Positions 608-55,314 of a stretch of 64,000 nucleotides of DNA are shown piece after piece. The notes beneath the pieces are model-generated. The model was given only the letters and a program-made list of their open reading frames with translations. It searched no databases and was not told where the DNA came from. A program made the translations under genes and the position numbers. The DNA lies in assembly GCA_964106645.2 (NCBI GenBank), contig OZ067045.1; one strand, written 5' to 3'. Origin of the DNA: Podarcis pityusensis. Its lineage: Eukaryota. The stretch's first letter is position 1; every line of letters begins with the position of its first letter.

Positions 608-651
608 TTATATATTTATATATATATATATATTATATATATATATATATT
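608..651. repeat. (TA)n microsatellite in the 3'UTR
   Basis: Imperfect tatata run visible directly. Confidence 0.95.
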
Positions 652-1317: not shown

Positions 1318-1449
1318 TCAGACCGATGCAATGACAATCATCAGGTGAGGAGAGATGTTTGAGATACTGGCGAGGAGGTCTGGGGCGAGGCGGGAGAGGT
1401 GACTCTCAGAGAACTCACAGGGTGGGAAGATCTGTAGGACGTAGGCAGG
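1318..1449 (-). CDS. SPEN: SPEN exon 15 (last coding exon, SPOC domain C-terminus, 132 nt including stop)
   Basis: Acceptor ttccag|CCT; encodes PAYVLQIFPPCEFSESHLSRLAPDLLASISNISPHLMIVIASV*, the conserved SPEN C-terminus. Confidence 0.98.
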   Translation of the reverse strand, partial: PAYVLQIFPPCEFSESHLSRLAPDLLASISNISPHLMIVIASV

Positions 1450-3446: not shown

Positions 3447-4764
3447 CTGAGAGGCACAAAGACAAAATCAGGGCACATTGGAGGAGGAGGAGGAGGAAAC
3501 ACTGGTCTGGTCCTGCCTTCCTTGTGCCTGCTCTCTGAAAGAGGGCTCTGGCAGGCAGCAAAGGAGCAGCAAACTCCAAAGTTCTCAGAAACACCACCAC
3601 ACCCTCTCCCCAGAAAAGCAAACTAGTGCAGGTTTATCATTCTAGATTAAAAAAACTTGTGGCTTCTATCCCTAGGGTCTCCAACAATGGCTCCTCCTCA
3701 AGGATGTCTGCATGCTCAGCCATAACCTGCCTCTGTGGCAGTGGTTCTGGTTTCCAGAGCAGCCTTCTCTGGTTTCCAGGACCTTGATTTCCAAGCCCCC
3801 ACATCTGTCCCCACACAGCTACAAATTAAGGGCCACTGTAGGACCCCAAAAACACTCCCTGTGACCTGCTACCCTGTGCATCGAATGCTTGTGGTAGCTG
3901 CTGCTGGCACACTCCACTTCCTTCTGAGGTGCATGCCTCCCAGCCATGCAAGAACTTGCCACACACATCCCAGCTGCATCAATCCCAAAATGTTTTTATA
4001 CACAAGCCAAGAGCAGGCTTGGAAACTGGGAGGAGGGGTGGGAACGGAAGACAGAGGGAGGGACTTGCTGGTGGCACTTCACTTCCTTGCCTCAGACAGC
4101 CTGGAAGATGCACACGCTACTCCCAAGGCAGAGCAACTCCCAGGCTGTGGAGAGGAAGGAATCAGATTCTGGGCACGTTAAAGAACAGGAGCCAATTCCC
4201 ACCTGGGTCTCTTGCAGCAAACACAACAGCCAGTCTTGCAACACAGGGACCCCTAACCTTTTGGGGCCCAGGGGCACTTTTGATACTGTTGTGGGCACCA
4301 CAAAATACCCATTTACAGAAGAAGGAAGGGTGATGCTCAGAATGCTTCCCTGACCCCAAAACAACTAGATGGGGAAAACTCCACACACCTCAAAATAAAA
4401 ACACAGCAGACAGCCCCCGCCCAACACACACACGTGCGCGGCACAGGAGCCTTAGCACGCACCATGAGAGGAGTTTGAGGGTGCTGTGGTTCTCACAGGC
4501 AACATCAGGGACCTCAGTTAAAGAGGAGCCCGCTTCACGATGGCATAAGCCATAAGTTCATAAGCATGAACAAGATTTTCTTTTCTGCACACATTTTAGC
4601 CCCAACTGAATTTTGCAGACTGCATTTTAATCAATTACTATGACACCTGGAGACATGGAACCTGGTCCACAAAAACTTATGATGCCATCCTAAACGCTGC
4701 TAGTCTCCAAGGTGGTACAAGACGCAGAAGCATCCCACCTATTGATCCCAGTGATTTGGCTTAC

Positions 4765-7700
4765 CTGAGAGGGGGTCATACTCCGAGAAGGCAGCCCGAT
4801 TGGCGATGCTCCGGAAAACTGAGGATGACCTAGCTGAGCCGCTGGGTGGTAGCTCCTCATGTCCCCGTAGACCGTCCTGTAATCGTGGAAGGAGGTGCCC
4901 GCCGGGTGCATGATCTGCACGCCGTGAGGGACGACAACTGGTTGCGTCAGAGGCAGTCCTGGCAGCTGGCCGCTGAGGAGGCGGGGCTCACTGTGGGGGG
5001 AGTGAGCCATCTTGACTTCCGAGGCCTTGGGTGCCTCTTTGCCTGACGGGAGAGTCTTTGTGGCGGGGGGCGTCTTCACAGACCTCCCTTCTGGCGTGCG
5101 GGACTGCCGGGTCTCTGGGTGGTGGTCGCCCCCCACTGCAGCCATGTGTGGGTGCATCATCATCCGCACGTCCCGGGGCACGTTGTACTGGTCGAGCCGA
5201 ATGCCGGAGGGGTGCAAGCGGTAGTCTGGCTGCATGACAAGCACGTCCGACTGCACGGGGGCGGACCCGCGGCACACTGTGTGGTGGTAGTGCATCTCCT
5301 CTTCCGAGGAATGCTGGGAAGACAGAGGTGGCATGACGATCTCTCGGATGGGGGCTGGCTGCGGCGTGCTTGACCGCTGCGGCTGCAGAGCCGCCCTTGG
5401 GGAGTGAAGCGCTTCAGGACGGATGCTGTAAGGCATGCCCGGCAGAGGAGGGGTGTTCATCCTGACCTCCCCTTGCGAGAGGTGCCCCAGGGAGACCGTC
5501 TGGGTGACGCTGTGTGGGGGCATGATCACAGACTGCTCGGGGTGCATGCTGGAGATGTATTGAGGCACCGGGATCCCAGGGCAAGGAGACCCCTGGATCC
5601 CTAGCATGGAGTTGTTCCCAGACAGGGCTGGGGAAGAAGGGCCGCCCGGATGACAAGCCCTTGGGAAGGGAGACGGAGAGTGCCCGCTTGTCCGTGGAGA
5701 GAGGGGCTCCTGCTTTGTGACCCCCAAGTGAGACACCACCCGCTCTGCTGGGGTGCTGGGCCCTGCACTCACATGATTGGCCTCTGGGTGAATCTTGCTA
5801 GACAAGGAGGGGTGATGAGGCCCAACCCCGGGGCTCAAGCTCGACGGCTGAAGAGTCTTGGTCTCCACTTTCAGGGCACCTGGGTCTGGAAGCTTTTTGT
5901 TGGTGGAAGAAGCAATGCTCTGTGGGAGCACCATCTGGTTGTGGACGAGGATGGATGGAGTGTTGGCAGACTGGGAAAGGACTTTGACTGGCCCTGACTG
6001 AGAAGTGGGCGCCTGGACAGAGAGGTGCAGGGGCTCCGATTTTTCCAGGCTGCCCCGTTCCTGCTTAATGGAGGAAAGTACAGGGGAAGGGCTGTACTGC
6101 TGAGCTCCCAGCACAAGGGACGATGGGGCTGAGACACTCCCGTACCCCGTTGGCGTCTGAGAGCCCTTTGGGATTGGCTGAGAGGGGCCAAGAGGCTCTT
6201 GCTTGATCTGGGACTTGGACACCGACTGCTGGAATTCAATGTCAACTGCACTTGCTGGGGGGATCTGGCTGATCTTGGCTGTGATCCGCTGCTGGCCTTC
6301 TGTCTTCTGCTGGGAATAGCTCAGGAGCACGATGCCTTCTGACGTGTTGACGCGAAGACCGGGGCTGGACCCTGTCTCCACCGGCCGATCTTCAATGACG
6401 GACATGGATCCCGGATGGAACCGGCTGTTGTCATTGGTACTTGGCCTCTGCTTGTATTTTGGCGAGAGGGCGTTGACTAGGCACGTCTGGGGCGCTTGCT
6501 TCACCAGAGTTATCCGCGGGGTTTCCTCAAGGTCAATGCTGTGGGGCATCCTGCTTATCACAGAAGTGGCCTTGGGAGCAATGACAGTGATGACCTTCTC
6601 TTTCTCGGTGAAAACTGGGGCCTCTGCAGCTGGCGGCTCCAAAGCATTCATGGCTGGGACAGCTGGCTTGTCTTCTGATCCAGGCCGGACAACCTCTGCC
6701 GGAGGGTGTGGAGGATCTTCCTCTACCAAACGAGGTGAACTCACAGGCTCGGCTATGGCAGTCGTGACATGCGTTGTTGATGCCACGCTGGTTGCAGAGA
6801 CGTACTTGGGCTCCATCAATATTTTCCTCAGAGTGCTGGAATTTGTGTCTATATCCGATGCCTTTGTGTCAGGGGGGAGAGCCGGCGGTGGGGTGGAACG
6901 GGCCCGGGCCTCCTCATGCTTCACAATCCACTCAGTCACCTTTGCTGTGCTGGAGTGAAGGGGGGCAGACCCAGCGGAGACAGGCTTTGCTGCAGCTGAA
7001 GATGGGGCTGCTGCTGGCAGAGGTGTATTGGGGGTGCCTGGTGGAGGAGTCACTGGAGCACTGTCAGCCCCCGGCTGTAGTTTGAAGGCGCTCTGGCTCA
7101 CCTCTTCAACAGGAACCGACGGAGAGAGCAGGTCCACTGCTTTGGGCAGGGGGGTGCTGTCTGCCACAGGAGGTTCTGGAGAAGCCCCCTCCAGGGGTGC
7201 AGCCTTGCTGGCATCAGGGGGACCTGGCTGGGAAGCCAGAGGAGAGCTTTTCTCTTGACTCTCTTCTTTCGAGGCTCCTTCTGACTTCCCTTTAACCTCG
7301 TTGGCCACTGGAGATTTGCTTTGTACTCGTTCGGGCTCAATAGTCCTCGGTTCTGCTGCTGTATCCCCTTTCTTGCTTGTGCTCCGCTTGCGCCTCGGCC
7401 GGGTGGTTTTCTGGCGGCCCCGTTCCTTCCGAGCCATGTCAGCCTCTTGCAAGGTTTCTGCTTCTTGTGCTGAATTGGAGGATTCGCTCACACTCACCTC
7501 CGCCTCTTTGGCAGAGTCTGCCTCTGGGGTAGTGCCAGGGCCTGGTGGGGCAGGCGGCTCAACTGAAGTGGCTTCTGACTCCAAGATATTGCTCACGGCT
7601 TGATCAGTTTCAGGCTCCATCTCTTCTCGTGCGGGTGGCAGCACCAACGGTTCTGCGGGCATTTCCGATTCAGATTCGGTAGGATACGTTGGCGGAGCAG

Positions 7701-10700
7701 GGAAACTTTCGGCCTCTCCAGAGATGTCATAGATGATGGAGCCAATGGCAGCCGCGAGTTCTGTTTCGCTGGCCTGATGAGCAGGCTTGTCCCCGTCTTC
7801 CTCCGGGCGAACGTCTGACACTTCAGCCGCCTGTTCCTTGTAGGCTGCAATCGTCTGGCTTTCAGTGAGCTTTGCAATATTCTCCACAGCCTGCTCCAGT
7901 TCGATCTGCTTGGCCAGCTGGTCTGCTTCAGGAGACTGTGTTGACTCACAAGCCAGATCTTTCTCTGTTTCCTGGAAGGGGTCTTCTGCCTCTGTCTTTA
8001 TGAAATGGGGTGACAATTTGTCTTCCTTCCGGGGACTTTTGTTCTTGGGGGACGATGCCGGCACAGGCTCCGTGTCCTCTTCGCTGGGCCGCAAAGCACC
8101 TTTGACTTCATCCACATTAAGCCGGATTTCAACGCTTTTCAAGCTCTTCATCAAGGAGGCTTTATCGGCGGCCTTGACGTTCCTGGATCTTCCACGTTTG
8201 GACTTTGGAGTTCTCTCAGAGACAGGCTTTCTTTCCACAATCTCAATGGTGCAGGCTTCGGGGACATTTTTCTCCAGCTCGACTTCTTTCCTCTCTCGCT
8301 TCTGGTCACTCAGAAGAGGCTCTTTCTCCACCTTGGGTTTGTTACCGTTTTCACTTCCATTCGAGCCTTGGCCAGAGAGGTCAGGGGGCTCTTCTGGCTC
8401 CACCAAATTCTCAGCCTTCGACTCGTTCTTCCCCCCTTTCTTGGCTTGAGGAGTGCTGGCTGCTGGAGATTGGCTGTGTGCCAGCTTCTGGGATCGAGGC
8501 GACCTCCACCCCTCCACGGGTTTCGGGACTTCCACCATCTCTTTTGATTCTGCTTCTTCTACCTCTGGGTGAGCTGGTTCAACCTTCACGGGAGAGACTT
8601 CCTCCTCAGGCTTGCGACGAGATTTGGGAGGCCTGCCTCTTCTTGGAGGGGTTGGAGTCAAGGCAGAGTCTGGTGGCTCCCTTTCAACTCTTTTCCTGGT
8701 AGATCTGGTGACCTCCAGAGTATCCTTCATAGGCGATGGGCCTTCGTGGTCCCCTGTGGTGGCATAAACTGACCGCACATTCCTGCGCCTTGTCCTGCCC
8801 ACTGGCAAGCTAGGCTCTGGGTTTTCCGGCTCTGGTGCAATACTTGGAGATTTAGCAGCGTTTCTCGAAACCTTCTCTGTTTCCACCTTCAGTGCTTCCC
8901 CGCGGGGAGAGCCCGACCTTTTAAGTTTCTCGCGGTCAATCCTTTCACTCTTCCTTGTGACAGGCTTCTCTGCAACGTTTGCAACCGAAGTCTGGACAGG
9001 GTTTTTGGAACGTTTATTCTTGTTCGGCTTCTTGTCTTTGATGACAACAAGCGGCTCGGCTTCCATCTCCGTGTCGGAGACTGGAGGCAGGACCTCCACA
9101 GCTGGCTCTGCTTTCTGCCCTGCACCAGCCTCAGAGTTCAGAGATGGTGAAACATTTTCTTCTTTCAGCTCAGGCAGTTCCTCGGACCTTGCTGCTGGTT
9201 TGAGTGGTGGTGGTGGTGGGATTATTTCAGGTTCTGGATCTGTGCAGATGTCCGCTTGAGAGAAGGAAGATCCGGGCGTGGGTGGCTTTGTGTCCAAATA
9301 GGAAGGGTGTACTAGGGATACCGAGTCTTCCTCAGGAGGAGTTGCTGCAGAAAGAGCAGGGTCCTTGTTGCTGTCTATTCCTGGCAGTGCTTCCATATGC
9401 TCAGGTGGTTCAGTTTTGACAGCAGCAAGGAGTTCTGGAAGAGGCTTTGGTTCTTCAGCCACAGGACCAAGTTCAGGCAGAGGCTTCTCTTCTCTCAAAG
9501 AGGGCACAATGACCGGCAACTTCTCGTTCGTGACCTTTTCCGGCATGGCTGGCCCTGGTTCTTGGAGTACAAGAGCAGCTGGAAATGGCCCAACTGAAAG
9601 CAGATGCTTATGCTCTGCCACTTTTTCCTCAGGCGCTGCTGCTTCTGGGCTTTTGGGCTGACTCTCCTTCTCCTCCTGCTTTTCTGCTTCTTTGGGCTTC
9701 TGGTCTTTTTCCTTTTCTTTTTGTTGCATTCTTGTGAGCTCCACAAACCTGCTGTGGAAGAGAACCACTGGCTCTGGCACAAAGTCTGACATGCCAATGT
9801 TCCCATCCAGGGATGCCTGCCGGCCGTACAATCTACCAGAGAGGAAGTCAAGGTCTTCGTCTTTCCTTTCCAAGTGTTGCAGGCGCTTCGAGTCCTGTTC
9901 AAAGATGGAGCTGTGCAGGAAGCGCGAGGCAAAGAGCTCTTGCCTCTCTTGCTCATCCTCCTTGTGGTCTTCCTTCTTATCATCCAGCTTCCCTTCAGAA
10001 TCGGTTCGGATTTTCTTCTTTTTCATATACCACGAGGGGATAGGCCTTGGAGCAGAATCCACTTTCTCTTTGTCCTTATTGTTCCTAAAATTAGCAAATC
10101 TCGAGTCCCAATCAAGGAAAGACCAGTTCTCTTCTCTGGAGGATGAGAGAGATTTGGCTCTCTCAAGCAAGGCCTTTGTGTCAGGAGTGATTGTCTTGTC
10201 CAATGCAAAGGAATAAAACTTGTGTCTTTCCGAAGAGGTTGGCAGCCTCTCCTCTCGATCACGAAGTTTCTCTTCCCTGTCCCGTAATAAAAAAGACAAC
10301 CTGGAGCTCTCCAGCAACGAAGGGGTTTTTGGAGAATGGGCTTTATTATCGCCGTCATCGTCAGAGTCCGAAGGCACCTCTCCTGGCTCCAGATCCCGTA
10401 TTGACCGCTTCCTTATGCCATCTCTCTTGACAATGCTGCTTGGGAAGGTGATGTCCACCCTCCCAGGCTCTTGCTTCACTTGGGACTCCCATCGGTTCAA
10501 TTCCTCCTCACAACTCACAGAAGATAATTTTATTTTAGCCATTTCTACCATCTGCTCTCTTCGACTGGAGTCGTAGGGGTTAAATTTCAAAGAATCCTCC
10601 CTTACAGCCACATTAGAATATGGAGGACCCTTTTCATCCATTTTAGGTGACTCTTTGGTTTCTTTCACAGGCACCAGCCTCGGGGACTCCAGCATCTCCT

Positions 10701-12646
10701 CATCCTCATGGAAAGGGAAGGGCCTGAGGCTAGGGGAACAGGCCGTCCTTTCAGAGTCCTCGCTCACCTGCCGAGAGCTCCTGTAGTTTCTCTCTCTCTT
10801 TGTGCTAATTTCAAAGTCGAAAGCGTCAGAGGATTTCTTCCGCTTGCTGGGAGGAGAGTCGTCTGTCACATCTTGCGGGGGTTTCCCCACTTCATGCACC
10901 AGGCTACGCCTCTCATACTCATCAAGATCTTTCTTTGGGCTGCCAAACTTCTCGTGCTTTGCAATTTCCATTTCCATTTGCTGCTTCAACCTGCGACTCA
11001 GCTCCATTTGCTTCCGATAACTCTGTGTGTGATCAATGTCAATGGGAATCTTCTCCTCGATATCGGATGATGGAGGCTTCTCTTGAGCTAGCTTGTGGTC
11101 GGGCACTTCTTCGGGAAGACTGCAGTAGGTTTTCCATGTGTCCTCTCGCTCAGTTCCTTGGTCATCTAACAGCTGTGTATGCTTGTGCTGCAATTTGATG
11201 GAGTTGACCTTCCTTACAGGGATCTCAGGGGCTTCCCCAGGTTCCTCAAGTAGCTCCCCCAGCCTAGCCTGCAGCTCTAAACTGGGCCGTAAACCAATCC
11301 CCAGAGAAATACTGGCTGGCTCTTGAGCTTCTTTGGGGCTGGTCACTGAGGCAAGCCTTTCCAGCTTGGTTTTCTTGGATTCCCTTTTAAGAGTCTCTTT
11401 CCTCAAGGGCTTTCTCTCAGATTCACTACTTGTTAACTCAATCTGCTTTTTCAAAACCACACGCGCTTCCTCCTCCTCCTGACTACTCCTTTTAAAGTCC
11501 ATTTTTTGCTTATCTGGCTTGAGGTTTGCATCCGCAAAGCGTCTTTTGCGAGCTTCCAGCTTTTCTAGATCTACTGGGTTAGTCACTTCACTAGGCAGCT
11601 CTGCCTTCAGGTGCTTCCTAGGCTTCAGTTTTGCATCCTTCTCAACCACTTCAATGTGACTGGCAAGCACCTTCTCTTTTGGCACTTTCACTCGGGCGGG
11701 TTCAAGTTTCAGCTGCTCTGACTTGGTTTGGTCTGCCTGAGAAATCTGCATTTTTTGTTCAAGCAAAGGAGACTTGAGCATGTCGTTTTCTTGCTTCCCA
11801 CGCAGCTTTTCCAAAGCAGGCTGTTCGATTACTTTCCCTTCCTTTTCCTTGACTCGTGTTAACACGACACATGGCATCAGCTCCAGGCGGTTCTTCGCAG
11901 CTCCTTCTTTATCTGCTCTCTCCCGACTCCCTTTGCTGCTGCCTTTGACCTTCTCAGGGGTGGGCTCCCGTTCGGTTTCTGGGTCTGTTTCCGACGACTG
12001 AGAGCTGGGAGAATGATTTTTGGCCCTCCGTTTCTGCTTCTCCGCTTTATCCTTTTCAAGTTTTTCTGGTTTCTCCTTCCTTACCAGGCGCTTGTCTTTG
12101 TCCGTTCTCTCTTGCTCAAAGGCCCGCTCTTTTTCGGGCTTCTCGCTTTTTGTGTAGCGCTCGAGGCGGGCTTTGTCCAGCTTGTCATAGCGGGGTGGGG
12201 AGAGGGAGCTGCAGCTGCCGCTCCGCTCCGAGGACCGGCTGTAGATCCTCCGCTCAGAATCGCTCTGCAGCCTCTCTGATTGGGACGGAGATGCTCCAGG
12301 GCTTTGGGGCCGTCGGGAGTGAGCTGGGCTTTGGCTCCTTTCAATGGGCCTCCTTTCATGGTCCCGGTCCCGGTCTGATTCAAATCGCTCCCGCTCCCGT
12401 TGCCTGTAACTATACTCTCTTATGTCTTGCTCGTAAGGGTCACCCCTGTAATCTCTGTATTCCCGTGGGTCGTCGTAATACCGTGGGTCGTAATACTCTG
12501 CTTGGTAAGGATCCCAGTCAGCATAAAACTCCCTGCTACGGGCTGGATATTCCCTCCGAGGATCTTCTGGATATGTTCCTGGGGTGCGAACAGCCTCATA
12601 GTAGGTACGGTCAGCAGCATAGTCGTAAGATCCTCTCCTTTCATCC
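4765..12646 (-). CDS. SPEN: SPEN exon 11 (giant 7,882-nt exon; disordered middle region with the RBPJ-interaction region)
   Basis: Acceptor ggcag|GGATGAAAGG at 12646, donor CAG|gtaagc at 4765. I checked the frame by hand from 12645 into the 2395-aa track ORF and found no stop. Contains SPEN motifs such as SSSREENWSFLDWDSRF and SEGIVLLSYS...ITAKISQIPPASA. Confidence 0.97.
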
Positions 12647-41289: not shown

Positions 41290-44062
41290 TGGGAGAGGAA
41301 CAGCACCTAGGCATTCTGTTGTGGTGCTCATAGCCTAGGTTTAAGGTGCCATTTGGCGATTGGCTTATATTTCGATTGGCATTTCTAACACTGTGTGCCT
41401 CGCCTTGCCTTTTAGAGAGGCTTTTGGTGAGGTGTTCAAGGGAAGATCAGTTGTGCAAGCTGCTTACCATTCACACAATCCAATATTATTAAATGACCAG
41501 TGTTCTCTCACTTGCTCTGGAGATCTAAAGCCAGAGTTTCAGCTGTGAAAACACTTTTCCAGTTCAAAACTGGTCTTACTGATATTCATAAGGTCAATCC
41601 TCTATTCAAATCCTGATAGATAGTGAGTGTGTTTGAGTGGGAGAAGATATAGCCACACTTATTTTAATCTACAGACTGGATCCTGATCTTTCTTAATCTG
41701 GATTCTGTCAACGAGGGAGACGAAAACTTCACTACTCCTCAAACAGCAGATTACAACAGGGGTGTGATCTGAAATGTCTTGTTCAACTTACAAGTGGGAG
41801 TGGTGCCTTTCAAAGCCTCCTGTTGGCCATTGTCACTTTAAACATCTGCACTCCAATGTCAAACTAATTTTCTGTGCCTTTAAGTGTCATCACATCTGCC
41901 AATGCTGCACAAAAATAAGACAACAGTATTGCCAGCTCCTGGGTACCAGACTTGCATTTGAGTCAGTATCCCAACCAAGAGAATTAGATGCTACAGATTT
42001 TGCGCGCCTTCTGACAGTTCAGTATTCTCATTCAACTCTATATCCTTCGTAAGAGTAAGGATACATTACTATAATTCTTGTAATGTATCTAACTTCCTAA
42101 GTAGAAACTCTACCATCACAGAACAGAAGAGATACTGGAAAACAAGAATTGTATCTCCCTTTCTAATTCAATGCTATCAATACCATCACTACCACTTTGC
42201 AACTCTTTCTGCTAACAACAAAAACAGTAACAATTTTATAGCAATTCTATCTGGGGTACACACACACAAACTACACAATGATCAAATTAATCAGTTTTCT
42301 CGCATTAATTAACTCAAAAGTATCAGGAGTTGAGTGTCATACTATTCCCCCATCAGCCATGAAGTTCACTGGGCAACCTTGGGCCAGTCACTCCCCCTTC
42401 ACAAATAAAATGAAGAGAATTATGTATGCAAACTTGAGCTTCATGGAGGAAAGGTGGGGCAAAAATAGGATAAATAAAACAAATAAATAAATGTGCTCAG
42501 CCAAACCTGAAAAAGAGAAAGTTGAAGATGACAACAGTGGGTGAGGGGTGGAGACCAGACAATATAAACAGGTCAATCAGGCAAAAATTTAACTCTCCAC
42601 ATTAAATAATATTTGGAGTGGGGGGGGTCACATAAATAAGTTCTAAAGTTAGGCCTCCTAGCTCTGGTTGGGGGTTGTTTTTCAACAGCAAAATTCAAAA
42701 CTGGAAGAAAAAAAGGAAATAAATCTTCAGCCCTTTGCTGCAGAAAGGCAGCAGGGGCTAATAAAGAGAGAGCGCTCATAATGACTGAACACAAAAGATG
42801 AATAAAGCACAGAAGGTGCAACAGTCAGCACTTCAAAAGATGCTGGCTCTTTAGCGTGTGCCTAATTAAAGGTTTTCTGCACTGCTGTGTGCCTCAGAGA
42901 GTACACATCCCAGGTTAAAGCAGTCACCCCTTCAAATCCAGGGATCAGCCCTTCCCTTCTAGGGATGGCCAGAGGTCCCTGTCTGTCACAGCAGCTGAGG
43001 AGTTGCTTGTTCTCTCAGCTCTCTCCCACAACTTTCTGCTTTGTACAAACAAAACACCAGGCCGGCAGGACCTACATCTAACACAGCCTCTTGGGAGGCG
43101 GCACACGGCCAAATCCGACTGGATGATTCCAGTTCAGACTGGTTCTGGGAACACAAACAAGGAGGTCCTTGCACAGTCGACACTATTTGGACACAGCAGC
43201 TCCCACAGCATACAAGGCTGCTCCTTGCTTATCAGCTGTGGAGACCTGAGGCCTCGTTTGCCCACATTTTTCCGGCCACCTTATCTGAGTGGAGGAAGGT
43301 GGGATACCAGTGTTTTTCTTTTAATTCGTTTCACTGTAATTATAATTTTTGCTACAGAAATCAAATAAACTCCGCAAACATGGCTGATTTGCAAATGCAC
43401 CTTGACTTAGACCTGTACAAATGAAAACAAAGCCTCAAGATGGAATTAATCAAGAAATGTTTTTGAATGCAAAGCATCTGAATGAACAATGGTCTTGGGT
43501 CCTGTCCTCCTGAAGGATTTTAAGATGAGATCTTCCCACAGGAACGGAACATCCTAGCAAGCAGCCTTGAAAAGAAACCCTAAACACAGACACACAAATC
43601 AACATGCCTGATAGCTACACTCCACACTGCTGAACAGTAGGGGACAGCTTAAGGCAAGGAATGCTAACACCTCTGGAAGAGACTGAGCAGTTAAGGAGAG
43701 CCTTAAAGAGCAAGAGAAAGGCATATCTGACAGGGCAGCTTTTGAAATTACTACTCTAGAGAGAAGCTAACACAATCCGCAGTTTACAACCCTGCAACCG
43801 AAGCTAGCCAACAGGCGTTTAGTCATTCAGCTTCTGGCTTAAGAAAGTTCTCTTTGTCCTAAAAGAATTACATAAAAATATCATAACAACGTAATATGTA
43901 AAAATGAACAGGGCTCTTTCTCTTGAAGAACTGTGTGTATGCTTGGAGGGGTGGGGACAGGGACATCCAATATTAAATTAAGAAAGGAAGGAAGAAACTG
44001 GTTATGTTCCTGAATGCTTGCACCATTAGCATGGGCATGACAGGCAACAGAAACAATTCAGA

Positions 44063-44216
44063 NNNNNNNNNNNNNNNNNNNNNNNNNNNNNNNNNNNNNN
44101 NNNNNNNNNNNNNNNNNNNNNNNNNNNNNNNNNNNNNNNNNNNNNNNNNNNNNNNNNNNNNNNNNNNNNNNNNNNNNNNNNNNNNNNNNNNNNNNNNNNN
44201 NNNNNNNNNNNNNNNN
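44063..44216. other. Assembly gap (N run)
   Basis: 154 N. Confidence 1.
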
Positions 44217-44981
44217 TCTCCACTCAAACTGCTTCTCCACCAGCAAAACCACATGGAAAATGGCCTTTGTTGAGCCTAAGTTCTGAAGCAGTTTTCCCCA
44301 ATTGTCCCCATGAACAGGAAGCACCTAACCCACCCACACTCCACTAAATACCATTTTAAGCAAGTGATTCATCCTTAGTTGGCAAATTCCAGAGCAGGAA
44401 AGAAAGGAGGGGGTGCCACAGGAGGGAATGGCCAGTATTATGTAATGCAATAAAGTTTGCCAATGTCTACTTTCACTCCAGGAGAGGAGGCTGGTAAGCA
44501 AGAGACAGCAACCAATCTCTCCAGCCAAGTCTCAGGAAACCTGAATGTTAAGTCATGGTGGTTTTTCTAGCACCTTTCACTACAGTAATTTTCATCTTCA
44601 TGTTTCAGGATACATGCAAGTAATCAATTTTAAAAAATCCATGACAAGGGCAAGTTTCAACAAAGAAGACAAATTCTTTCTAAAGTTCATCTGGTTTAAC
44701 CAAAGAGTCATAGTCCATTAATCACAGCAACTACATTAGAAAACACAAGAATTAATTCAAGTGGAATTCTCGAAACACATTCTAGATAAAAAGAAGCTCT
44801 GTGGTCTCTACAGTAACATTACTTGAAAGCTGGGCTTCACCACAAGTATGTGAGTTTCACAAGCCCAATGTGAAATAATCACTGTTTGAAATTCCCCAGG
44901 CACTAGGCACGTTCTGCAACTGCTACGGGTCCAATTGCAGAGGTTGGCCTCTGACATCTCCATCTGACTGGCCCCTCCAGC

Positions 44982-46606: not shown

Positions 46607-47083
46607 CTGTCACTGCTGGTACTGCTACTGCTGCTGATTGAATCACTGCTTGATGATCTGCTCCTAGAGCCACTGCCACTAGGGGACCTAGTAGGTCTTG
46701 ACGCTTGGCTCGCCAGCCTCTGAGGAGACTGGGTCCTAGACTGGGATGAATGTGGTGACCGGCTCCTGCTGTGCTGGTAATTCCGCTCTGGCCTCCGGCC
46801 TCGTACCTCCCGTGTGAGATCATCCCTGTAGATATCCCTGTGTACCACGCTGGGCAAAGTAAACTGCTCCCGGGCCCGAGGTTCGTAACGGGGGTCATGA
46901 GCATCAAAACGGCTCGGGCTGCGACTCCGAGAACTGTAATAGAGTCCATGTTGTAAAGTCCGCTCTCGAGGATCTCTATAGTAATCCTGATCATAATGTC
47001 TTGTCCGATCAAATCCTCCTGTCCCCCGTTCATGGTGTCCATAGGCACTATGTTCATAAGCACGCTCCCTGTTATCTGAAGCC
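46607..47083 (-). CDS. SPEN: SPEN exon 3 (R/D/Y-rich and RS/Ser-rich region, 477 nt)
   Basis: gcag|GGCTTCAGAT ... GACAG|gtatgt; encodes ASDNRERAYEHSAYGHHERGTGGFDRTRHYDQDYYRD...RSRSPHSSQSR...SSSSSTSSD. Confidence 0.97.
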
Positions 47084-48912
47084 CTGCATTTAGGAGGGGG
47101 AAAATATTTATGTCAATCAGAGATGGAGGAGAAGGTCCCAACATCATGCAAACATTTAGTGTGGCACTGGCGATCTTCACAAGTAATATTAACAATAAAA
47201 GACTCTAAATGACTATAATGACTATTAAGCAAAACCAATGAGCTTGGTTCTTCCACACAACTCCTCAGTTACATCTAGGTACAGCACAGTTTGGCACTGA
47301 TTCTGCTTCACTGATTAAACTGGGCTTTCATGACCAGAGTTCTGCATCACAGAACAAACTAATGATCTTCTGGGCCCTGAATGATTTTCACATAGTTTTT
47401 TTGTTTTATAAAAAAAATCACCAATTTAAAATATATTTTTTCTAGGACCACAATGCTCTAGGATTTTAAGTAATTACAACTATTCATGTTTTTCATTGCA
47501 TGGGTATGCTGAAGATCTTTTGCTAAATGTTTGGCTGGCCATGAAAGCCCCTGTGAAAAGCATGAGTCCAGAAAAGGCAAGTTACTGTTAGCATTTTAGT
47601 TGCTAAGATTCCTTGGATATAATGTCAAAACAGTGAATGCTCAATACATTGATCCTATTAATTATCCAAGAGGTAGGTACTTTTAAGTGCCATAGACAAT
47701 GTGGAGACAAAGCCATGCCCACAAAGGTATTAAGTCCCCAAAGCAAGATTTCTGTTGATTTACTGGTAAGCTGTGGGTATTTTTGTAAGCAGCTTTGAAT
47801 CAAAGAAAAGTGGGGTATTAATATTTAAAGAATAAAGCTAATTGCCACAGTTTCTATACTCCACATAAATAATCAGCAGTTTGCTCTACTATGTACTTCA
47901 GAGTTAATGAGAACACTGTGCCTGTGACTCAGTTCTATGGCCCAGAACACTGATGAGTATTTTCATAGGACAGTATTTCAAAACAGAAAGCAAAATGACC
48001 CAGAAGGCTTCCAATAGTTTAGTACTCTAATTTATTAAAAGTAAAAGGATGGCCAATCTTTAGCGGCATGGCTAATCAAGAAAAATAGTAATTCAACAGG
48101 AAATGTTTGTGGATTTAGTAATAAGCCAGAGCCTGAGTTAGTTGCAAAATTTAAAGCCCCATTTTAGGAAGAAGGGTTTTAAGCCATCTCCCTTTGTTCC
48201 AACAGTCTTCTTTGAAAACCAATTCACAGCTACTTCAGTTCTAGGCACTCAATCCTCTCCCACCTCCACCCCCACAGTTCCTCCTCTTCTGCTGGGTCCC
48301 AGGACAGATCTTCTCAAAAGCTTGAACTCTCTTGTATTTTTCTTTTGTTTAGTCTTAAGAGTGGATTAGAATCTTCCTTGATTATAAATTTCTCTCTCTT
48401 CCTACACATGCATCTCAAGCACAGGGCTAGTAATCCCTGAGATGAAGGTGCTTGATGAATCTTAAAGGCTTTCTTTTCTCTGAATTCCTGCCTCTTGAGC
48501 AATTCAGAGTTGTCTTAACAGAAATGCAAAGCAAAATTCCAAAATGCACAATATACATTTCCAATTATTTGCAGCTACATGCAAATAAGGCAGCAAACTG
48601 TTTCCAAATGTGTGCACGTGTGTGTGCATGTGTGTCTTCTTCCTTAAAAGAAGAAAAACAAGCAGCACTTTGCACCCTATGGAACATTATGCCAGTGAGA
48701 GCTGGTGTAATAAAGGAACAGAAGCAATACTCCTAGAGGGTTACTGGTATAGTAAAAGAGCTCCTTATCCATTAGAAGGACACAGAAGACAGACAAAAGA
48801 ACTAGCAGAGCTGAAAATCTAATGACTACAGCAGTGCTGATTATCTATTAGTACTAATTACTACTGGAGTTAGTGGAAAGAGGGATTGACTTGGGTTAGG
48901 AGAGGAGCTAAT

Positions 48913-49076
48913 NNNNNNNNNNNNNNNNNNNNNNNNNNNNNNNNNNNNNNNNNNNNNNNNNNNNNNNNNNNNNNNNNNNNNNNNNNNNNNNNNNNNNNNN
49001 NNNNNNNNNNNNNNNNNNNNNNNNNNNNNNNNNNNNNNNNNNNNNNNNNNNNNNNNNNNNNNNNNNNNNNNNNNNN
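48913..49076. other. Assembly gap (N run)
   Basis: 164 N. Confidence 1.
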
Positions 49077-49199
49077 GATGAGCGAGCAAGAAAAAAAATC
49101 TTAGTGACAAACAGGGAAAAAAATCCACTGGAAGCCAGTTGTCCCAGATTGACATGAGGACTCTGTAACCCCCAGACTTCATTCTTCAGGCAGCAAATC

Positions 49200-50257
49200 A
49201 CGTCTAGGTATATCCAACAAAAGAGAGTGACTCCAGCTCTAAGTCTGAATCAAACAGTTGGTAGAAAATACACCAAGATATGAATAGATGAATGCCTCTC
49301 ACTGCTGGCTAGCAGACATCCTCTGTCCATCTTTGTAACCATCCAACAAAGTCAATTTTCTCTTTATGTATCCACAAGCTGATTATCAACAGAGTGTCTT
49401 TAAAGCTAAAGTGCCTTTTAACTGTACAGTGACAAGTGCGCTCTTAACAAGACTAGATAGTAATCCACTCCCCTGGGCCACTGGGATCTTGGCTGTGTAC
49501 CATCCCACAAATTCGAGGTAGTAGCCATTATTCCAGCACCTTAACAGATGGCCTGTAATTTCCAAGATTTAGCAGTGTCCATCTCCTTCACTTTTGCCAA
49601 TACCACGAGGAACAGTAATCCCAAGATATACGGAAGTGGTGTAGATCCAAAAGTGGAAACATCAAAAGCTGCCTTCTGCTGTCTTCACCATACCACAATG
49701 TATTCCCATGGCTAGAGGTTGTTTGTAGAATCCAAGACGATGAATGCATAACTTTTAAAAAGCCTACTAGAAATTTTTGGAATCAATCCAATTCTATACA
49801 TAAACTATGCACACCAGAAAAACCCTGAAAAAACTAGCCATGAAGCTTCTCCAAGACTCTGTAGGTTCTACATTCTGAAGATACTCCATACTGGGTTTTG
49901 AGGCTTGCAGTAACGAAATAGCTCCATTTGATAATAAGGATACATCCGAGTAAAGCCTTAACGTTATCCAAGAATGAGATTGTTCTAGAAGTTCTAGAAG
50001 AATAGCTCCATAATCGAGGATGACCATCGGAAGTCTTCCGTCTTAGGACCAAGTATCCAACCAGCTGCAGGAAATATCCTCTACAGATCCACAAGATACC
50101 AGCCACTGGGGCGGGAATCACTTCCGTTTCCAAACCCAAAATAGGAAACGCAGATAAATCCCCAAATTTTAAATCCATCTGGGGGCCCTATACAGGAGTT
50201 TGTGTTTCTCACCACATCAAATACAAAATACCTGCCTAGTGAAACCTTGGAACTTAC
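49200..50257 (-). promoter_or_regulatory. Candidate cis-regulatory RNA element at the 5' end of SPEN intron 2 (UGGA-rich, TE-free)
   Basis: 21 TGGA on the transcribed strand against 2 on the other strand in 49201-50220 (hand count). Repeated ATGGAGCTATT motif; no recognisable TE. Confidence 0.55.
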
Positions 50258-50578
50258 CCATCAAGTCTCCGCTCATAGCGTCCTTCCCGTGCATGAAGCG
50301 ATGGTGGTGGGCCATACGTGGGCCCACCACCACCTCCTCTGAACCCAGAAACCTCTCTACTACGAGATGCTATGGAAACTGTATCATCCAATCCCCGAGC
50401 AGCGCTAGGAATGGTTCCCGGTTCATTATAATCCGTCCGAAGGTCTCTATCTCCCATTTTGTTGACAGAGTTGTGTGCCTTCTGGGCACTCTTGATGTCC
50501 ACAAAATCCACAAAGGCTGCCACGCCACCTTCTGACCCCCTTTTGGGGAGAATTTTGACACTTTCAACACGTCCATAT
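50258..50578 (-). CDS. SPEN: SPEN exon 2 (RRM1, 321 nt)
   Basis: ctag|ATATGGA ... GATGG|gtaagt; encodes YGRVESVKILPKRGSEGGVAAFVDFVDIKSAQKAHNSVNKMGDRDLRTDYNEPG...RYERRLDG. Confidence 0.98.
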
Positions 50579-50997
50579 CTAGGGGAGAAAGAAAGAAAAA
50601 TAGTATGTATTAAAGGCTCACACAGACAGAACATGTTGTCGAACCACATTTTATTTGGCTGAAATTTCCAGCACTGAGGCTGTGATGCTAAGCATATTTA
50701 TTCTGCAATCCATATGTGACTCCCCTCTATTTTATCTGTCCTTGTAAACAAAGGTTTCTGTTAGATTTGCTTTTGATTTTATTGTGTATTTAGTGTCTGT
50801 CGATGTTAGGGATGATGTCACAACCATTGGCATTGGCTCACACAATAAAAGTTTGACTTGCATATTTATTTTGAATTTATTCCTGTTAAACGCATTGCAG
50901 TAACTGTGCTTCACATCATGGCTTTAGTCTGTTAGAAACAAAGTTTCAAACAAACTGCTTTTTTACTCAGCTGCTCCTATCCTTCCCATCGCACTTT

Positions 50998-52660: not shown

Positions 52661-55314
52661 TAATCAGAGGCACAGGCCAAATTTACAATATGTGTGGGAG
52701 GAAGGAAACCTATGCAGTCCAATTTCTCCATCTACAGTTTTAAAAACCAGGCACAGCTGGAGACACTATTGCCAGATTACTACCATAGGGATTGCCCTAA
52801 TTTTTTCAGCCCTAACACAGATTGCACAATACTTGTTCACCCACACCTAAATCTCAGGGCTGTGTAACTATTTGGCACAGCATGTCTTCTCATGCAACAA
52901 GCCGCTGGGATGCGTGTGGCAGCTGCTTTTCAAGGAGGAGAGAGTAAAAGTTACACATCCTCACCAACATACACACAACCCTCAAGACAAAGCAGCTGTG
53001 CGAGCAGGAAGGCTTTCAACGCTCTGTGCCCTAGCATCGCCTGCGCCTTTTTAATTGCACATACCTTTTAGTCACCCACCGTGAAGATTAATCTGCCTAG
53101 TGATCCAGCCCAGCCCCACCCATTGGCTACTCTCCAAACTGCTCCTGTGGTGGCAGTTCCCGCGGGGAGGGGAGCTGCACTGCTTCATGCTATCTGATCC
53201 AGAAGGAAGGGAGGGGAGGGAAAAGATCTGCAATGTTGCATCACGGGATCATTTACTGCAGCAGAACAATGCACGGCAAGGAGAAGAGAGGCTTTCTGAA
53301 GGGCTGCCGGAGGACAGGCAATGGAGGAAAGGGAGAGCATTTTTCACAGTGGCATTTGCAAGAGCCACAACAAGGAAGGAGAAACAGCAGAGAAAAGCTT
53401 TTGTGAGGGTAACCTTCGTTGGGAAAGAGACACAAAAAGGACAGGAGCCATCATGACCTTCACCATGCTGAAAAGAGCCCTTGTGAAAACGCTTCCTCCA
53501 TCTCTCTTTACTTACCTCGGCCTTTCCAAGAAGTAAACAGATAAAAAACAGAGCAAGGGGGGAGAGGGGGAATTTGCTGCATGCTGGCTCTAAAGATCCC
53601 CATGAAAACAAAGCTCCTCTTGTTGCTCTTTTTTAGCAACCTTCCCCACCTTGCATAATTCATGTTAATCAATAAGTAACTCGCAGCATGTCAGACAAGC
53701 TGGTCTCATTGTATGGTTTGCTTTTCAGTGGCTTCTATGAAGCTCTTTCTGCAAGTAGAATCCTCTGGGGGCATGAAGCCCTTTTCTTGGTTCTCTGGAA
53801 CAAGTTAAGACCTTTCAGTTGATCTGTTCCTTTAAGGAACCTGAAGGCTACAGAAGACAGGACAGCAAAACTGGGACTCAGGGCCCCTTGTCAATTACCC
53901 AACCACAAGGCCATGCTAAGCCAGTTTTTCTGGACTTAAACATGATCAGCACATTCACCTTAGACCAGGCTACCACAAAGAAGCCAACAGGGCAGCTGTG
54001 CTGCCCCCTCTCATCTTTCTTCCTCCACAATGGATCCTGGGGCAGGTGGTATTTTTCCAGGCTTAATTAAGTAGATTTCTTCATTGTCATCCTTAGGCTA
54101 CGTGTCACCATGAGACAAGCCTCAGCTGAACTGGGGAAATGGGGAGACCTGAGGAAGCTGTCTGCAATAATCCATCATCACACTCCATAGCAACCTAAGT
54201 TAATGATGTGCATGTTAGCATTTTTGTTTGTTAACTATAATTAGTAAAACTGATTACAAAAGATTATGACACTGAGGACATTAAATCTGGGGAGACAGAA
54301 GTCTGCAAAGGCCACCAGAAAAAAATAGGACAGCTTAACAAAATATAAACGGAAAGAGCAAGAGCCAATGTGGGGCTGTTTTCCAAAAATAGGCATTTCA
54401 TGGTAACAGGGATATGGTGACCGGAAGTTTAAAAGTCAATATTCTATCACTGAATCCAACTTAGTACTCATTCCAAAGACTAACACAATATCTAGATTTC
54501 ACACATGCATTTTGTACAGTCATTATTGGTCAATTTAGTCCTTTTAAAAGCATAGCTGTGAAAGAGAGCTTGTGGTTTGCAAAACTAGGTTCTCCCAAGC
54601 TACTGAAAGCAGAACTAAACTGCTGCTGCTTATTTGCTGGCAACAGATTCCAAGGGCTCAAGGCAGAAATTGGCTTAATTAACAACACTGATTAGGAGAA
54701 AACCATATTCACAACTGCTGCAATGTGTATTTAACCAAAAAGAAAGTGTGCTAAACGTGGCAGTTGGGGAGGGGGGAGATTCCAGAACCTGCCATTCACA
54801 TTTTTACAAGTCACTCTTCTTTAGACAAACGCCAGCTTTGCTCAAATCTATCACGGAATTGGAGGAGGGTGCGTAGACACATGTACAGGTACTATAGGCT
54901 CTTGCTAAGCACTATAGGTGTGTTCATATTGCTCATCTTTGTTCATGCAAACACAGCCCAACCAAGTGAGGTCAACAGCACTGCTGACAATGTGAATGCA
55001 TATATTCTATTCAATTAAAATCTCTATCTCCCCCCCCCCCCACATATCCCATGGGCACATAAGCCGGTTAGCAACACACACATTTAAAAAAAACCAATGC
55101 CCAAATAAATTATAGGTATTGCAGTACTGGAACACCTACAGATACACTGATTTAATGGCATGCACAGAGCAGGGCAATAATCTTATGCTGCCTGTTACCA
55201 TTTCCCACTAGTCTGCTTGTATATGTCTATAAAAATAGGTAAGGAAGTTGCAAGCACTTTCCTCTATATTTACTGGAGTCCTAGTAATTATCTATGTTAA
55301 TTTCAGGCAAGTAC

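What the first reader, a model, noticed from the sequence alone, without database searches (positions are those of the whole stretch)
49200..50257. Strand-specific UGGA-rich, TE-free 1-kb element at the start of intron 2: candidate RNA-based SPEN autoregulatory module
Seen: in 49201-50220 I count 21 TGGA on the transcribed strand against 2 on the opposite strand, where about 4-6 each would be expected by chance. ATGGAGCTATT occurs twice (49917-49927, 50001-50011) with a variant ATGGAGTAT, plus a TTCTAGAA tandem palindrome and a CGGAAGACTTCCG inverted repeat. The stretch retains CpGs and lacks TEs, unlike the neighbouring large introns. Established: SPEN RRM2-4 bind structured repeat RNAs (Xist A-repeat, SRA) and recruit NCoR/SMRT-HDAC3 through SPOC; squamates lack Xist. 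From memory and unverified: this intron start is highly conserved in mammals and SPEN has been reported to crosslink to its own pre-mRNA there. Inference: the nascent intron may be a built-in multivalent landing pad for SPEN or GGA-binding SR/hnRNP proteins, acting as a cis negative-feedback loop. It could be an ancestral SPEN ligand that predates Xist.
Basis: partly seen in the sequence, partly recalled or inferred. Interest (0 to 1): 0.78.

Follow-up and report, generated by a model that had tools for sequence, protein, structure and literature searches.

The report
Conserved UGGAU array in SPEN intron
The first 1.2 kb of the second intron of the lizard SPEN gene carries about twenty copies of the short RNA word UGGAU, on the transcribed strand only; selection has kept these words from fish to birds, and they most likely help decide whether the gene makes full-length SPEN or a dead-end transcript.

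Summary
The count is correct: 21 TGGA on the SPEN (minus) strand against 2-3 on the other strand. After correcting for post-hoc motif choice, the count alone is only borderline. Cross-species comparison shows it is real.

- **Alignment.** The first 1181 nt of intron 2 align end to end in eight sauropsids, at 76% identity between lizard and crocodile or crane. The rest of the intron does not align.
- **Motif.** In an unbiased k-mer test, GGAT (14 of 18 copies invariant) and TGGA (13 of 22) are by far the most conserved words; the baseline is 16%.
- **Fish.** The same place in killifish is unalignable but has the same strand-specific excess (TGGA 33 vs 6; GGAT 22 vs 1). There too the array ends at an ultraconserved core, which is N-masked in the window.
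- **Not found.** It is not coding, a TE, a tandem repeat or an Rfam family, and base-pair covariation gives no support for a conserved fold.
- **Product.** Reading into the intron stops the ORF at once. Such 133-135 aa forms are annotated in more than 20 teleost species.
- **Mouse papers.** This intron start is conserved, m6A-marked and alternatively spliced. SPEN crosslinks at exon 2 and represses its own RNA.

Best reading: a multivalent pre-mRNA element that controls unproductive processing. Whether SR proteins or SPEN itself read it is unresolved.

The parts
50258..50580 (-). SPEN exon 2 (C-terminal part of RRM1 plus a Gly-rich stretch); its last base is 50258.
   Evidence: The translation is 100% identical to SPEN in seven other sauropsids. 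Four-fold sites are themselves unusually conserved (0.73 identity to crocodile).
50252..50257 (-). 5' splice site GTAAGT. The in-frame codon after GG|G is TAA (50254-50256), so any read-through ends the ORF at ...RRLDG.
   Evidence: All short ORFs found end at RRLDG.
50058..50257 (-). Near-invariant first 200 nt of the intron. It includes two conserved weak 5'-splice-site-like sites: CAG|GTATTT (G at 50231) and GTG|GTGAGA (G at 50212).
   Evidence: 155 of 200 positions are invariant in 8 species. Splice-site scores are 1.6 and 2.7 on average, and 4.7 in crocodile and crane for the second site.
50113..50162 (-). Candidate conserved hairpin (19-nt arms, 12-nt loop) that would sequester TTGGAAACGGAAG.
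   Evidence: It is an inverted repeat (I2). RNAalifold pairs A1 columns 102-151, mostly with one-sided G-C/G-U changes and one compensatory change, but several pairs are broken. This support is weak.
49077..50257 (-). Block A: the (U)GGAU array. It holds 22 TGGA and 18 GGAT on the sense strand, against 4 TCCA and 3 ATCC (ATCC counted over 49200-50257).
   Evidence: It aligns end to end in 8 sauropsids. Motif-specific conservation is shown. Spacing is more regular than random.
50055..50070 (-). Invariant run CTGCAGCTGGTTGGAT. In Tiliqua and Gekko it continues as GGATACCTGC / GGATATCTGC, which resembles the Xist A-repeat word.
50086..50095 (-). Invariant run CTTGTGGATC.
49964..49972 (-). Invariant run CTTGGATAA.
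49724..49736 (-). Invariant run CTTGGATTCTACA.
49640..49648 (-). Invariant run GGATCTACA.
49459..49472 (-). Invariant run GGGAGTGGATTACT.
49337..49345 (-). Invariant run TGGATGGTT.
48913..49076 (-). N-masked stretch, not read or filled. Its position corresponds to an ultraconserved core that closes the array.
   Evidence: In six other sauropsids the segment between blocks A and B is 163-165 nt long, 96.7% identical pairwise, with 148 of 167 columns invariant. A profile built from it hits killifish intron 2 at L008:16670-16761 with E = 1e-14. No Rfam family matches. No letters were printed.
48650..48912 (-). Block B: the conserved flank downstream of the core.
   Evidence: About 80% identity to crocodile, crane and Sceloporus, and 89% to Gekko.
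47083..48649 (-). The remainder of intron 2. It is not alignable beyond close relatives and its TGGA/TCCA counts are at background level.

Best explanation
The stretch is a cis-acting element of the SPEN pre-mRNA.

**Anatomy.** About twenty copies of (U)GGAU, all on the transcribed strand, fill the intron from the exon 2 splice site to an ultraconserved core about 1.2 kb downstream. The first copy lies about 80 nt in. In killifish the same interval is about 1.75 kb.

**Proposed mechanism.** The array is a multivalent platform for an RRM protein that reads GGA or GGAU. Candidates are SR proteins of the SRSF1/SRSF9 class, SPEN itself, or both. Bound protein shifts the choice between two outcomes:
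- productive exon 2-exon 3 splicing;
- an unproductive outcome, by a downstream alternative 5' splice site, intron retention or early termination.

In the unproductive outcome the ORF stops at the first intronic codon. That leaves a 135-aa RRM1-only ORF or a decay or retention substrate, and so sets SPEN dosage.

**Shown.** Anatomy, strand specificity, motif-level purifying selection, recurrence in fish, and the immediate stop codon.

**Taken from papers.** In mouse, the conserved, m6A-marked and alternatively spliced state of this intron start, and SPEN self-crosslinking and self-repression.

**Inferred.** That the words are protein-binding sites, which protein reads them, and the direction of the effect.
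For: 1. Eight sauropsids align over the whole 1181 nt (98% Zootoca, 91% Rhineura, 83% Sceloporus and Tiliqua, 81% Gekko, 76% crocodile and crane). The 3' half of the intron does not align. This is the only long conserved intronic block in the gene.
2. Unbiased test: GGAT is invariant in 14 of 18 copies and TGGA in 13 of 22, against 15.6% for all 4-mers; the next best word has 6. Beyond nt 210, GGAT is invariant in 11 of 13 copies against a 10.5% baseline. Permutation gives p < 1e-4. TGGA sites are kept in 17-22 of 22 positions per species, whereas no TCCA site is shared by all.
3. Pre-specified replication: the first 2 kb of killifish intron 2, unalignable to lizard, has TGGA 33 vs TCCA 6 and GGAT 22 vs ATCC 1. 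Shuffles give 12.2 +/- 3.2, and 0 of 3000 reach 33. Counts return to background further on. The array ends at a homologue of the same core (E = 1e-14).
4. The complement word is rare and covariation is absent, which fits single-stranded protein sites.
5. GG|G TAA gives an immediate stop. Exon 1+2 proteins of 133-135 aa are annotated in more than 20 teleost species, one of them as 'isoform X2' of the gene, and occur on Logan contigs.
6. Papers on mouse Spen:
   - Intron 2 has an m6A peak region of about 1.17 kb next to the 5' splice site with phastCons 0.85-0.99, and is shown with an RBM15 irCLIP track.
   - It also has an unannotated minor alternative-5'-splice-site form that depends on METTL3 (PMC8327914).
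   - SPEN irCLIP signal lies across exon 2, and Spen knockout raises Spen RNA (PMC7282817).
7. Papers on candidate readers:
   - The pseudo-RRMs of SRSF1 and SRSF9 read GGA.
   - SRSF1 binds UGGAU-containing RNAs at about 55 nM.
   - SRSF9 binds intronic CUGGAUU (PMC9022966, PMC7813835, PMC6101530).
Against:
- No strong conserved downstream 5' splice site and no conserved poly(A) signal were found in block A or around the core. The best sites score about 2, against 4.7 for the authentic site.
- The regular ~40-nt spacing is not seen in killifish.
- DRACH words are not enriched on the sense strand (15 vs 27), so the mouse m6A story does not by itself explain the array.
- The teleost short proteins are annotation models and could partly reflect pipeline behaviour.
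- No binding protein was tested.
Confidence: 0.6

Rival explanations
1. The nascent intron is a landing pad for SPEN itself. SPEN tethered to its own nascent RNA recruits NCoR/SMRT-HDAC3 through SPOC and silences its own promoter in cis. This would be transcriptional feedback rather than a splicing switch.
For: [quoted passage not shown]
- High-affinity SPEN binding to the XIST A-repeat needs at least 4 units, and binding protects the GAUAC within GGAUACCUGC (PMC10870365).
- The array has 18 GGAU.
- A few copies read GGAT[A/G][C/T]CTGC (Tiliqua, Gekko, and position ~937 in several species), and GGAT-N0-2-CT[AG]C occurs 3-4 times on the sense strand against 0-1 on the antisense.
Against: - Spen ranks only #204 among SPEN-bound RNAs, and the published track is described as exon 2, not the intron.
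- That study found only AU-rich content and no shared motif at SPEN sites.
- The extended pattern was designed after looking at these sequences and is absent from killifish.
- There is no repeated GC hairpin, no tandem repeat and no covariation.
- Most copies are UGGAUU, UGGAG or UGGAA rather than GGAUAC.
Confidence: 0.15
2. The block is the 3' UTR of a genuine short SPEN isoform (exon 1 + exon 2, 135 aa, RRM1 only) made by termination inside intron 2. The UGGAU words would control that mRNA's stability, localisation or translation rather than the splicing choice.
For: Exon 1+2 proteins of 133-135 aa ending at RRLDG are annotated by NCBI, Ensembl and individual projects in more than 20 teleost species. 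One is 'msx2-interacting protein isoform X2' of Antennarius. Several sit on Logan contigs that must be spliced. Long conserved strand-specific sequence is typical of 3' UTRs.
Against: No AATAAA or ATTAAA is conserved in the block: none in the first 2.2 kb of the window's intron and none in the whole Gekko intron. No tetrapod annotation of the short form turned up. In mouse the event is classed as an alternative 5' splice site, not an alternative last exon.
Confidence: 0.1
3. It is a DNA-level element: an intragenic enhancer or silencer with a homotypic cluster of sites for a factor reading GGA(A/T), such as ETS-type factors.
For: Deep conservation and an ultraconserved core are also typical of developmental enhancers. 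Some copies are good ETS-like sites, for example ACGGAAGTG and the GGAAGACTTCC palindrome.
Against: - The strand bias is extreme and conserved (GGAT 18 vs 3; killifish 22 vs 1), which orientation-free DNA sites do not need.
- Most copies (TTGGAT, GTGGAT) lack the ETS flank.
- The block starts exactly at the splice site and ends at a fixed core in both lizard and fish.
- In mouse the RNA of this region is modified and alternatively spliced.
Confidence: 0.1
4. It is a chance or compositional artefact, or a decayed repeat, pseudogene or numt.
For: After correction for the choice of motif and window, the single-genome count is not exceptional: it ranks 4th of all k-mer by window tests. The sense strand is T>A and G>C, as in many introns.
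Against: Motif-specific conservation over about 280 Myr and independent recurrence in a teleost. No Pfam hit in any frame, indels not in threes, single copy, and no tandem repeat.
Confidence: 0.02

Closest known systems
Mouse Spen intron 2 'alternative intron' (Wei et al. 2021, Genome Res, PMC8327914)
   Same: Same gene, same intron, same end. A region of about 1.17 kb next to the 5' splice site has phastCons 0.85-0.99, and conservation fades about 2 kb in. That matches block A + core + block B here. The mouse region is alternatively spliced.
   Different: The paper describes m6A, RBM15 and an alternative 5' splice site. It does not mention a UGGAU array. In the lizard, DRACH is not enriched on the sense strand. 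I could not read the mouse DNA, so orthology rests on position and size only.
Ultraconserved unproductive-splicing ('poison') elements of SR and hnRNP genes (Lareau et al. 2007, cited; SRSF3, TRA2B and SRSF7 papers listed)
   Same: An RNA-binding-protein gene, deep non-coding conservation, and inclusion that brings an in-frame stop. An ultraconserved core sits inside the intron.
   Different: Those elements are compact cassette exons of 100-300 nt with clear splice sites. Here a 1.2-1.8 kb motif array links the upstream splice site to the core, and no strong splice sites were found at the core.
Xist A-repeat, the SPEN ligand (Button et al. 2024, PMC10870365; Carter et al. 2020, PMC7282817)
   Same: Many copies of a GGAU-containing word (GGAUACCUGC in the A-repeat), spaced tens of nucleotides apart in U-rich RNA. 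Multivalency is needed for binding. It concerns the same protein.
   Different: The array is not a tandem repeat, has no AUCG-hairpin half-unit, and only a few of its copies extend to GGAUAYCUGC. Per Carter et al. the A-repeat is TE-derived and eutherian. This array is at least as old as bony vertebrates.
SR-protein GGA platforms: the CE9 element of the hnRNP A1 intron (SRSF9, CUGGAUU) and HSATIII (GGAAU)n RNA (SRSF1/9)
   Same: The word matches: UGGAU and CUGGAUU occur repeatedly, including three exact CUGGAUU in killifish. The position is intronic, downstream of a 5' splice site. The array is multivalent.
   Different: CE9 is a single short element, and HSATIII is a satellite transcript acting in trans. 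Neither is a conserved 1-kb array inside a target gene's own intron.
YTHDC1 intron 11, WTAP intron 6 and the OGT detained intron: conserved intronic switches giving homeostatic feedback
   Same: Conserved intron sequence near a 5' splice site that diverts transcripts to a non-productive form and tunes the level of a dosage-sensitive regulator.
   Different: The effectors are different (m6A/YTHDC1, O-GlcNAc signalling), and no GGAU array has been described for them.

Membership tests
Conserved unproductive-splicing element of an RNA-binding-protein gene | Lies in a gene for an RNA-binding or RNA-processing protein | tested here: met
   SPEN (msx2-interacting protein): RRM, MINT and SPOC domains, 97% identical to Zootoca SPEN.
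Conserved unproductive-splicing element of an RNA-binding-protein gene | Non-coding sequence conserved as well as, or better than, neighbouring coding sequence | tested here: met
   Block A is 76% identical to crocodile, against 73% for the 8-kb coding exon and 0.73 at 4-fold sites of exon 2. The core is 96.7% identical among six sauropsids.
Conserved unproductive-splicing element of an RNA-binding-protein gene | Inclusion introduces a premature stop | tested here: met
   GG|G TAA: there is a stop at the first full intronic codon in all species examined, including killifish.
Conserved unproductive-splicing element of an RNA-binding-protein gene | The element is actually included in some transcripts | tested here: inconclusive
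Short exon 1+2 forms are annotated in more than 20 teleost species and occur on spliced Logan contigs. A minor splice form is published for mouse.
Conserved unproductive-splicing element of an RNA-binding-protein gene | Defined alternative splice sites bounding the included part | tested here: inconclusive
   Only weak conserved GT sites were found: +27 and +46 in the intron, and scores of about 2 inside the core. The window letters of the core are masked.
Xist A-repeat-like SPEN ligand | Four or more tandem units that each carry GGAUA(C/U)CUGC | tested here: not met
   There are 18 GGAU, but only 3-4 copies per species fit GGAT-N0-2-CT[AG]C, and none does in killifish. TRF finds no tandem repeat.
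Xist A-repeat-like SPEN ligand | A GC-rich hairpin half-unit and inter-repeat duplexes | tested here: not met
   There is no repeated hairpin. The RNAalifold covariation term is +0.58 kcal/mol, and only 17 of 265 pairs show compensatory change.
Xist A-repeat-like SPEN ligand | Direct SPEN RRM binding | not testable with these tools
   The only evidence is the published mouse irCLIP 'across exon 2 of Spen'.
SR-protein (SRSF1/SRSF9) binding platform | Clustered single-stranded GGA words, optimally UGGAU or CUGGAUU | tested here: met
   34-37 GGA and 10-16 TGGAT per species on the sense strand. The complement word is rare, and no structure is supported.
SR-protein (SRSF1/SRSF9) binding platform | Binding by the protein and an effect on splice-site choice | not testable with these tools
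   No CLIP data are available through these tools.
m6A (DRACH) cluster | Excess of DRACH on the transcribed strand | tested here: not met
   15 sense vs 27 antisense in the window, and similar counts in six of the seven other species. Only 3-4 GGAC per species.
Transposable element, tandem repeat, pseudogene or known RNA family | Repeated copies, a coding remnant or an Rfam match | tested here: not met

The most novel reading that the evidence does not exclude
The UGGAU array is SPEN's own ancestral RNA ligand. SPEN loads onto its nascent intron 2 through the GGAU(A/U) words and shuts down or diverts its own transcript. This feedback loop would be as old as bony vertebrates. The eutherian Xist A-repeat (GGAUACCUGC units) would then work because it imitates this pre-existing self-recognition code.
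Probability: 0.2. Interest if true: 0.9.

Novelty: new variant of a known kind. Interest (0 to 1): 0.66.

Why it matters
SPEN is the effector of X-chromosome inactivation and a dosage-sensitive co-repressor, yet how its own level is set is not understood, and neither is what its RRMs recognise outside Xist.

This element gives a concrete handle that can be mutated: about twenty conserved words whose removal, inversion or blocking should change SPEN output. It ties together three separate published observations in mouse: SPEN self-crosslinking at exon 2, self-repression, and m6A-dependent alternative splicing of intron 2. It shows that the underlying sequence feature predates mammals and Xist by hundreds of millions of years.

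Tried and rejected
**Readings tested and rejected**
- Coding remnant or numt: six-frame translation under standard and mitochondrial codes, plus Pfam on the ten longest open pieces, gave nothing. Indels are not multiples of three.
- Tandem repeat or TE: TRF and repeat finders show only a 9-nt lacertid duplication and short chance pairs, and the block is single copy in the window.
- Known RNA family: Rfam gave no match in the window, crocodile or killifish.
- Conserved RNA fold: covariation gives no net support.
- m6A motif cluster: DRACH is not enriched.
- Conserved poly(A) signal or strong alternative 5' splice site: none found.
- Cassette exon in the core: conserved pyrimidine-rich AG sites exist, but there is no good 5' splice site.

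**Steps that failed**
- Mammalian orthologue: the aardvark gene range was just over the 100-kb limit, so no DNA came back.
- Three look-ups of non-longest isoforms found nothing.
- Sequence homology of block A in killifish: none by blastn or nhmmer. Only the core is alignable.

**Not replicated**
- The extended A-repeat-like pattern was designed post hoc and is absent from fish.
Full report
**Where it is.** The window carries most of a lacertid SPEN (msx2-interacting protein) gene on the minus strand. The 2395-codon open frame at 4690-11877 is 97% identical to Zootoca SPEN. The ORF at 50254-50649 holds the RRM1 exon, which ends at 50258 with GG|GTAAGT. Mapping a lacertid SPEN protein onto the window puts the next exon at 46609-47082, so intron 2 is 47083-50257 (3175 nt). 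The finding covers its first 1058 nt. I searched the exons one at a time by reference and left out any joined spliced model.

**The observation.** The enriched word is really wider than TGGA: most copies read [T/G]TGGAT on the sense strand. Dinucleotide shuffles give 7.3 +/- 2.4 copies against 21 observed (0 of 5000), and no other 1-kb window of the 64 kb has as many. The motif and window were picked after looking, however. Across all 4-mers and all windows this excess ranks only fourth (p = 2.6e-5). So one genome alone would not settle whether it is real.

**Conservation.** I fetched the SPEN locus of Zootoca, Rhineura, Sceloporus, Tiliqua, Gekko, Crocodylus and Grus.
- Intron 2 is 3.0-3.36 kb long in all of them.
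- Its first 1181 nt, up to an N-masked stretch in the window, align end to end. Identity to the window is 98.5, 91.5, 83, 83, 81, 76.5 and 76% respectively.
- About 260 nt after the mask align at about 80%. The remaining 1.5 kb does not align outside close relatives.
- No other intronic block in the gene comes close to this length.
- The block is as conserved as the 8-kb coding exon (73%) and as the 4-fold sites of exon 2 (0.73).
- The first 200 nt have 155 invariant positions.

**The motif is what is conserved.**
- Of the 22 sense-strand TGGA in the window, 13 are invariant in all eight species and 21 are kept in crocodile. Only 15.5% of all 4-mer positions are invariant (permutation p < 1e-4).
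- In a ranking of all 4-mers by number of invariant copies, GGAT (14 of 18) and TGGA (13 of 22) lead, and the next word has 6. The lead holds when the near-invariant first 210 nt are excluded (GGAT 11 of 13 against a 10.5% baseline).
- Ten of the 14 invariant runs of 8 nt or more contain GGAT or GGAA.
- Every species has 21-28 TGGA against 1-8 TCCA, and 10-16 TGGAT against 0-1 ATCCA.
- TCCA sites are not conserved.
- Spacing is more even than random (CV 0.50 against 0.95, p = 4e-4). The first eight gaps are 32-49 nt.

**Replication in a fish.** A 135-aa killifish protein brought in its locus, L008. Exon 3 lies 7.2 kb downstream of exon 2, so this is the same gene and intron. The fish intron does not align with block A by blastn or nhmmer. 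Even so, its first 2 kb hold 33 TGGA against 6 TCCA and 22 GGAT against 1 ATCC (shuffles 12.2 +/- 3.2; 0 of 3000), and counts fall to background further on. Apart from T-runs, these are the two most strand-biased 4-mers, as in the lizard. TGGATTA occurs five times, TGGATAC three times and CUGGAUU three times. Because the motif and location were fixed in advance, this test carries the most weight.

**The masked stretch.** I did not fill or read the N run at 48913-49076. Using only six other sauropsids (not the lacertid) and printing no letters, I found the following.
- The segment between the two conserved blocks is 163-165 nt long and 96.7% identical pairwise, with 148 of 167 columns invariant.
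- A profile of it hits killifish intron 2 at L008:16670-16761 (E = 1e-14). That is about 1.76 kb into the intron, exactly where the TGGA-rich zone ends.
- It matches no Rfam family.
- It has conserved pyrimidine-rich AG sites but only weak GT sites.

So the layout is exon 2, then the GGAU array, then an ultraconserved core, and this layout is shared by teleosts and sauropsids.

**What it is not.** It is not coding, a numt, a TE or a tandem repeat. It is not a known RNA family. It is not a fold supported by covariation: the covariation term is +0.58, and 17 of 265 pairs show compensatory change. One 19-bp hairpin at 50113-50162 is compatible with the changes seen, but support is weak. DRACH is not enriched on the sense strand. 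No poly(A) hexamer is conserved. The only conserved 5'-splice-site-like sites are weak ones at +27 and +46.

**Products.** The codon after GG|G is TAA, so a transcript that keeps the intron start encodes exon 1 + exon 2 only. Such proteins of 133-135 aa, ending in RRLDG, are annotated by NCBI, Ensembl and genome projects in more than 20 teleost species, once as 'isoform X2' of the gene. They also occur on Logan contigs that must be spliced between exons 1 and 2. One Logan ORF of unknown species (P0150) joins a different 5' exon to exon 2 with the same stop. I did not fetch it or the other unnamed tetrapod contigs, because they could be human. Fourteen small runs from two relatives hold 66-80% of the block's words, but they are only guessed to be RNA and could be capture data.

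**Papers.**
- *Wei et al. 2021 (PMC8327914).* Mouse Spen intron 2 is a showcase of intronic m6A close to a 5' splice site. It is shown with an RBM15 irCLIP track, and it has an unannotated minor alternative-5'-splice-site form that depends on METTL3. Their code files give mean phastCons60way of 0.99, 0.85, 0.88, 0.89 and 0.96 for five contiguous pieces spanning mm10 chr4:141,520,883-141,522,052. Control pieces 2 kb or more into the intron score 0.06. That is the same size and position as the block here.
- *Carter et al. 2020 (PMC7282817).* SPEN RRM2-4 irCLIP signal lies across exon 2 of Spen, Spen mRNA rises on Spen loss, and the authors propose self-repression in cis. Spen ranks #204 among targets, and they found no sequence motif.
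- *Button et al. 2024 (PMC10870365).* SPEN needs at least 4 A-repeat units and protects the GAUAC within GGAUACCUGC.
- *SR proteins.* SRSF1 and SRSF9 read GGA through their pseudo-RRM. SRSF1 binds UGGAU RNAs at about 55 nM. SRSF9 binds intronic CUGGAUU.

**Reading.** The strand bias, the start at the splice site, the fixed end at the core, and selection on short words rather than on structure all point to a single-stranded, multivalent protein platform on the pre-mRNA. SR proteins bound downstream of a 5' splice site repress it and activate a site further downstream. This is established knowledge that I recall (Erkelenz et al. 2013) and did not check here. An array placed between the authentic site and the core would therefore favour a long exon 2 extension or retention that carries the immediate stop. 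That fits the mouse minor isoform and the fish short forms. The self-CLIP result and a few A-repeat-like copies (GGATACCTGC in Tiliqua, GGATATCTGC in Gekko, GGATGCCTGC at about position 937) are suggestive. However, that pattern was defined post hoc and is absent in fish. A DNA-level enhancer is unlikely given the orientation bias, though I could not exclude it.

- I took no contig for human and compared none.
- From the papers' human XIST text I used only the 10-nt consensus word.

Noticed in passing
window 48913-49076 (N mask); L008:16670-16761: The masked stretch sits where six other sauropsids have a 163-165 nt ultraconserved core (96.7% identity). Part of it is recognisable in killifish (E = 1e-14). 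It matches no Rfam family and has only weak splice-site-like signals. What it does is unknown.
   Followed up: partly
window 1-1400: The + strand is strongly enriched in GGAG and AGGA (18 observed against 4.7 expected, p = 2.5e-6), which is the top k-mer excess in the window. The region aligns to crocodile at about 75% (300-1452). It lies beyond the SPEN stop codon on the minus strand, so it may be 3' UTR or a neighbouring gene.
   Followed up: no
window 53050-53306: A short conserved non-coding block in SPEN intron 1: 75% identity to crocodile, 83% to crane, 77% to Gekko.
   Followed up: no
window 43084-43172 and 44257-44411 (beside the second N mask, 44063-44216): Conserved islands in intron 3: 86.5% identity to crocodile over 89 nt, and a conserved flank next to the second masked stretch in Gekko and Sceloporus.
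   Followed up: no
window 49982-50000: The TTCTAGAA 'tandem palindrome' is a 9-nt duplication (GTTCTAGAA x2.1) present only in the window and Zootoca. It is not part of the conserved element.
   Followed up: yes
window 50260-50580: Exon 2 encodes an identical peptide in all eight sauropsids, and its 4-fold sites are also unusually conserved (0.73 identity to crocodile and crane, 0.92 to Gekko). This suggests nucleotide-level constraint on the exon, which is where SPEN irCLIP signal was reported in mouse.
   Followed up: partly
protein P0150 (Logan contig, 1037 nt, species unknown): Its ORF joins a non-canonical upstream sequence to '...REEKIIEHFK' of exon 1 and then exon 2, and stops at RRLDG. 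That makes it a spliced transcript reading into intron 2, from a species whose exon 2 carries the GPAYGPP variant rather than the sauropsid GPTYGPP. I did not fetch it because it might be human.
   Followed up: no
L003 (Sceloporus) intron 2, A1 columns ~483-515: A lineage-specific (TA)n(GA)n microsatellite is the longest insertion seen in the conserved block in any of the eight species.
   Followed up: no
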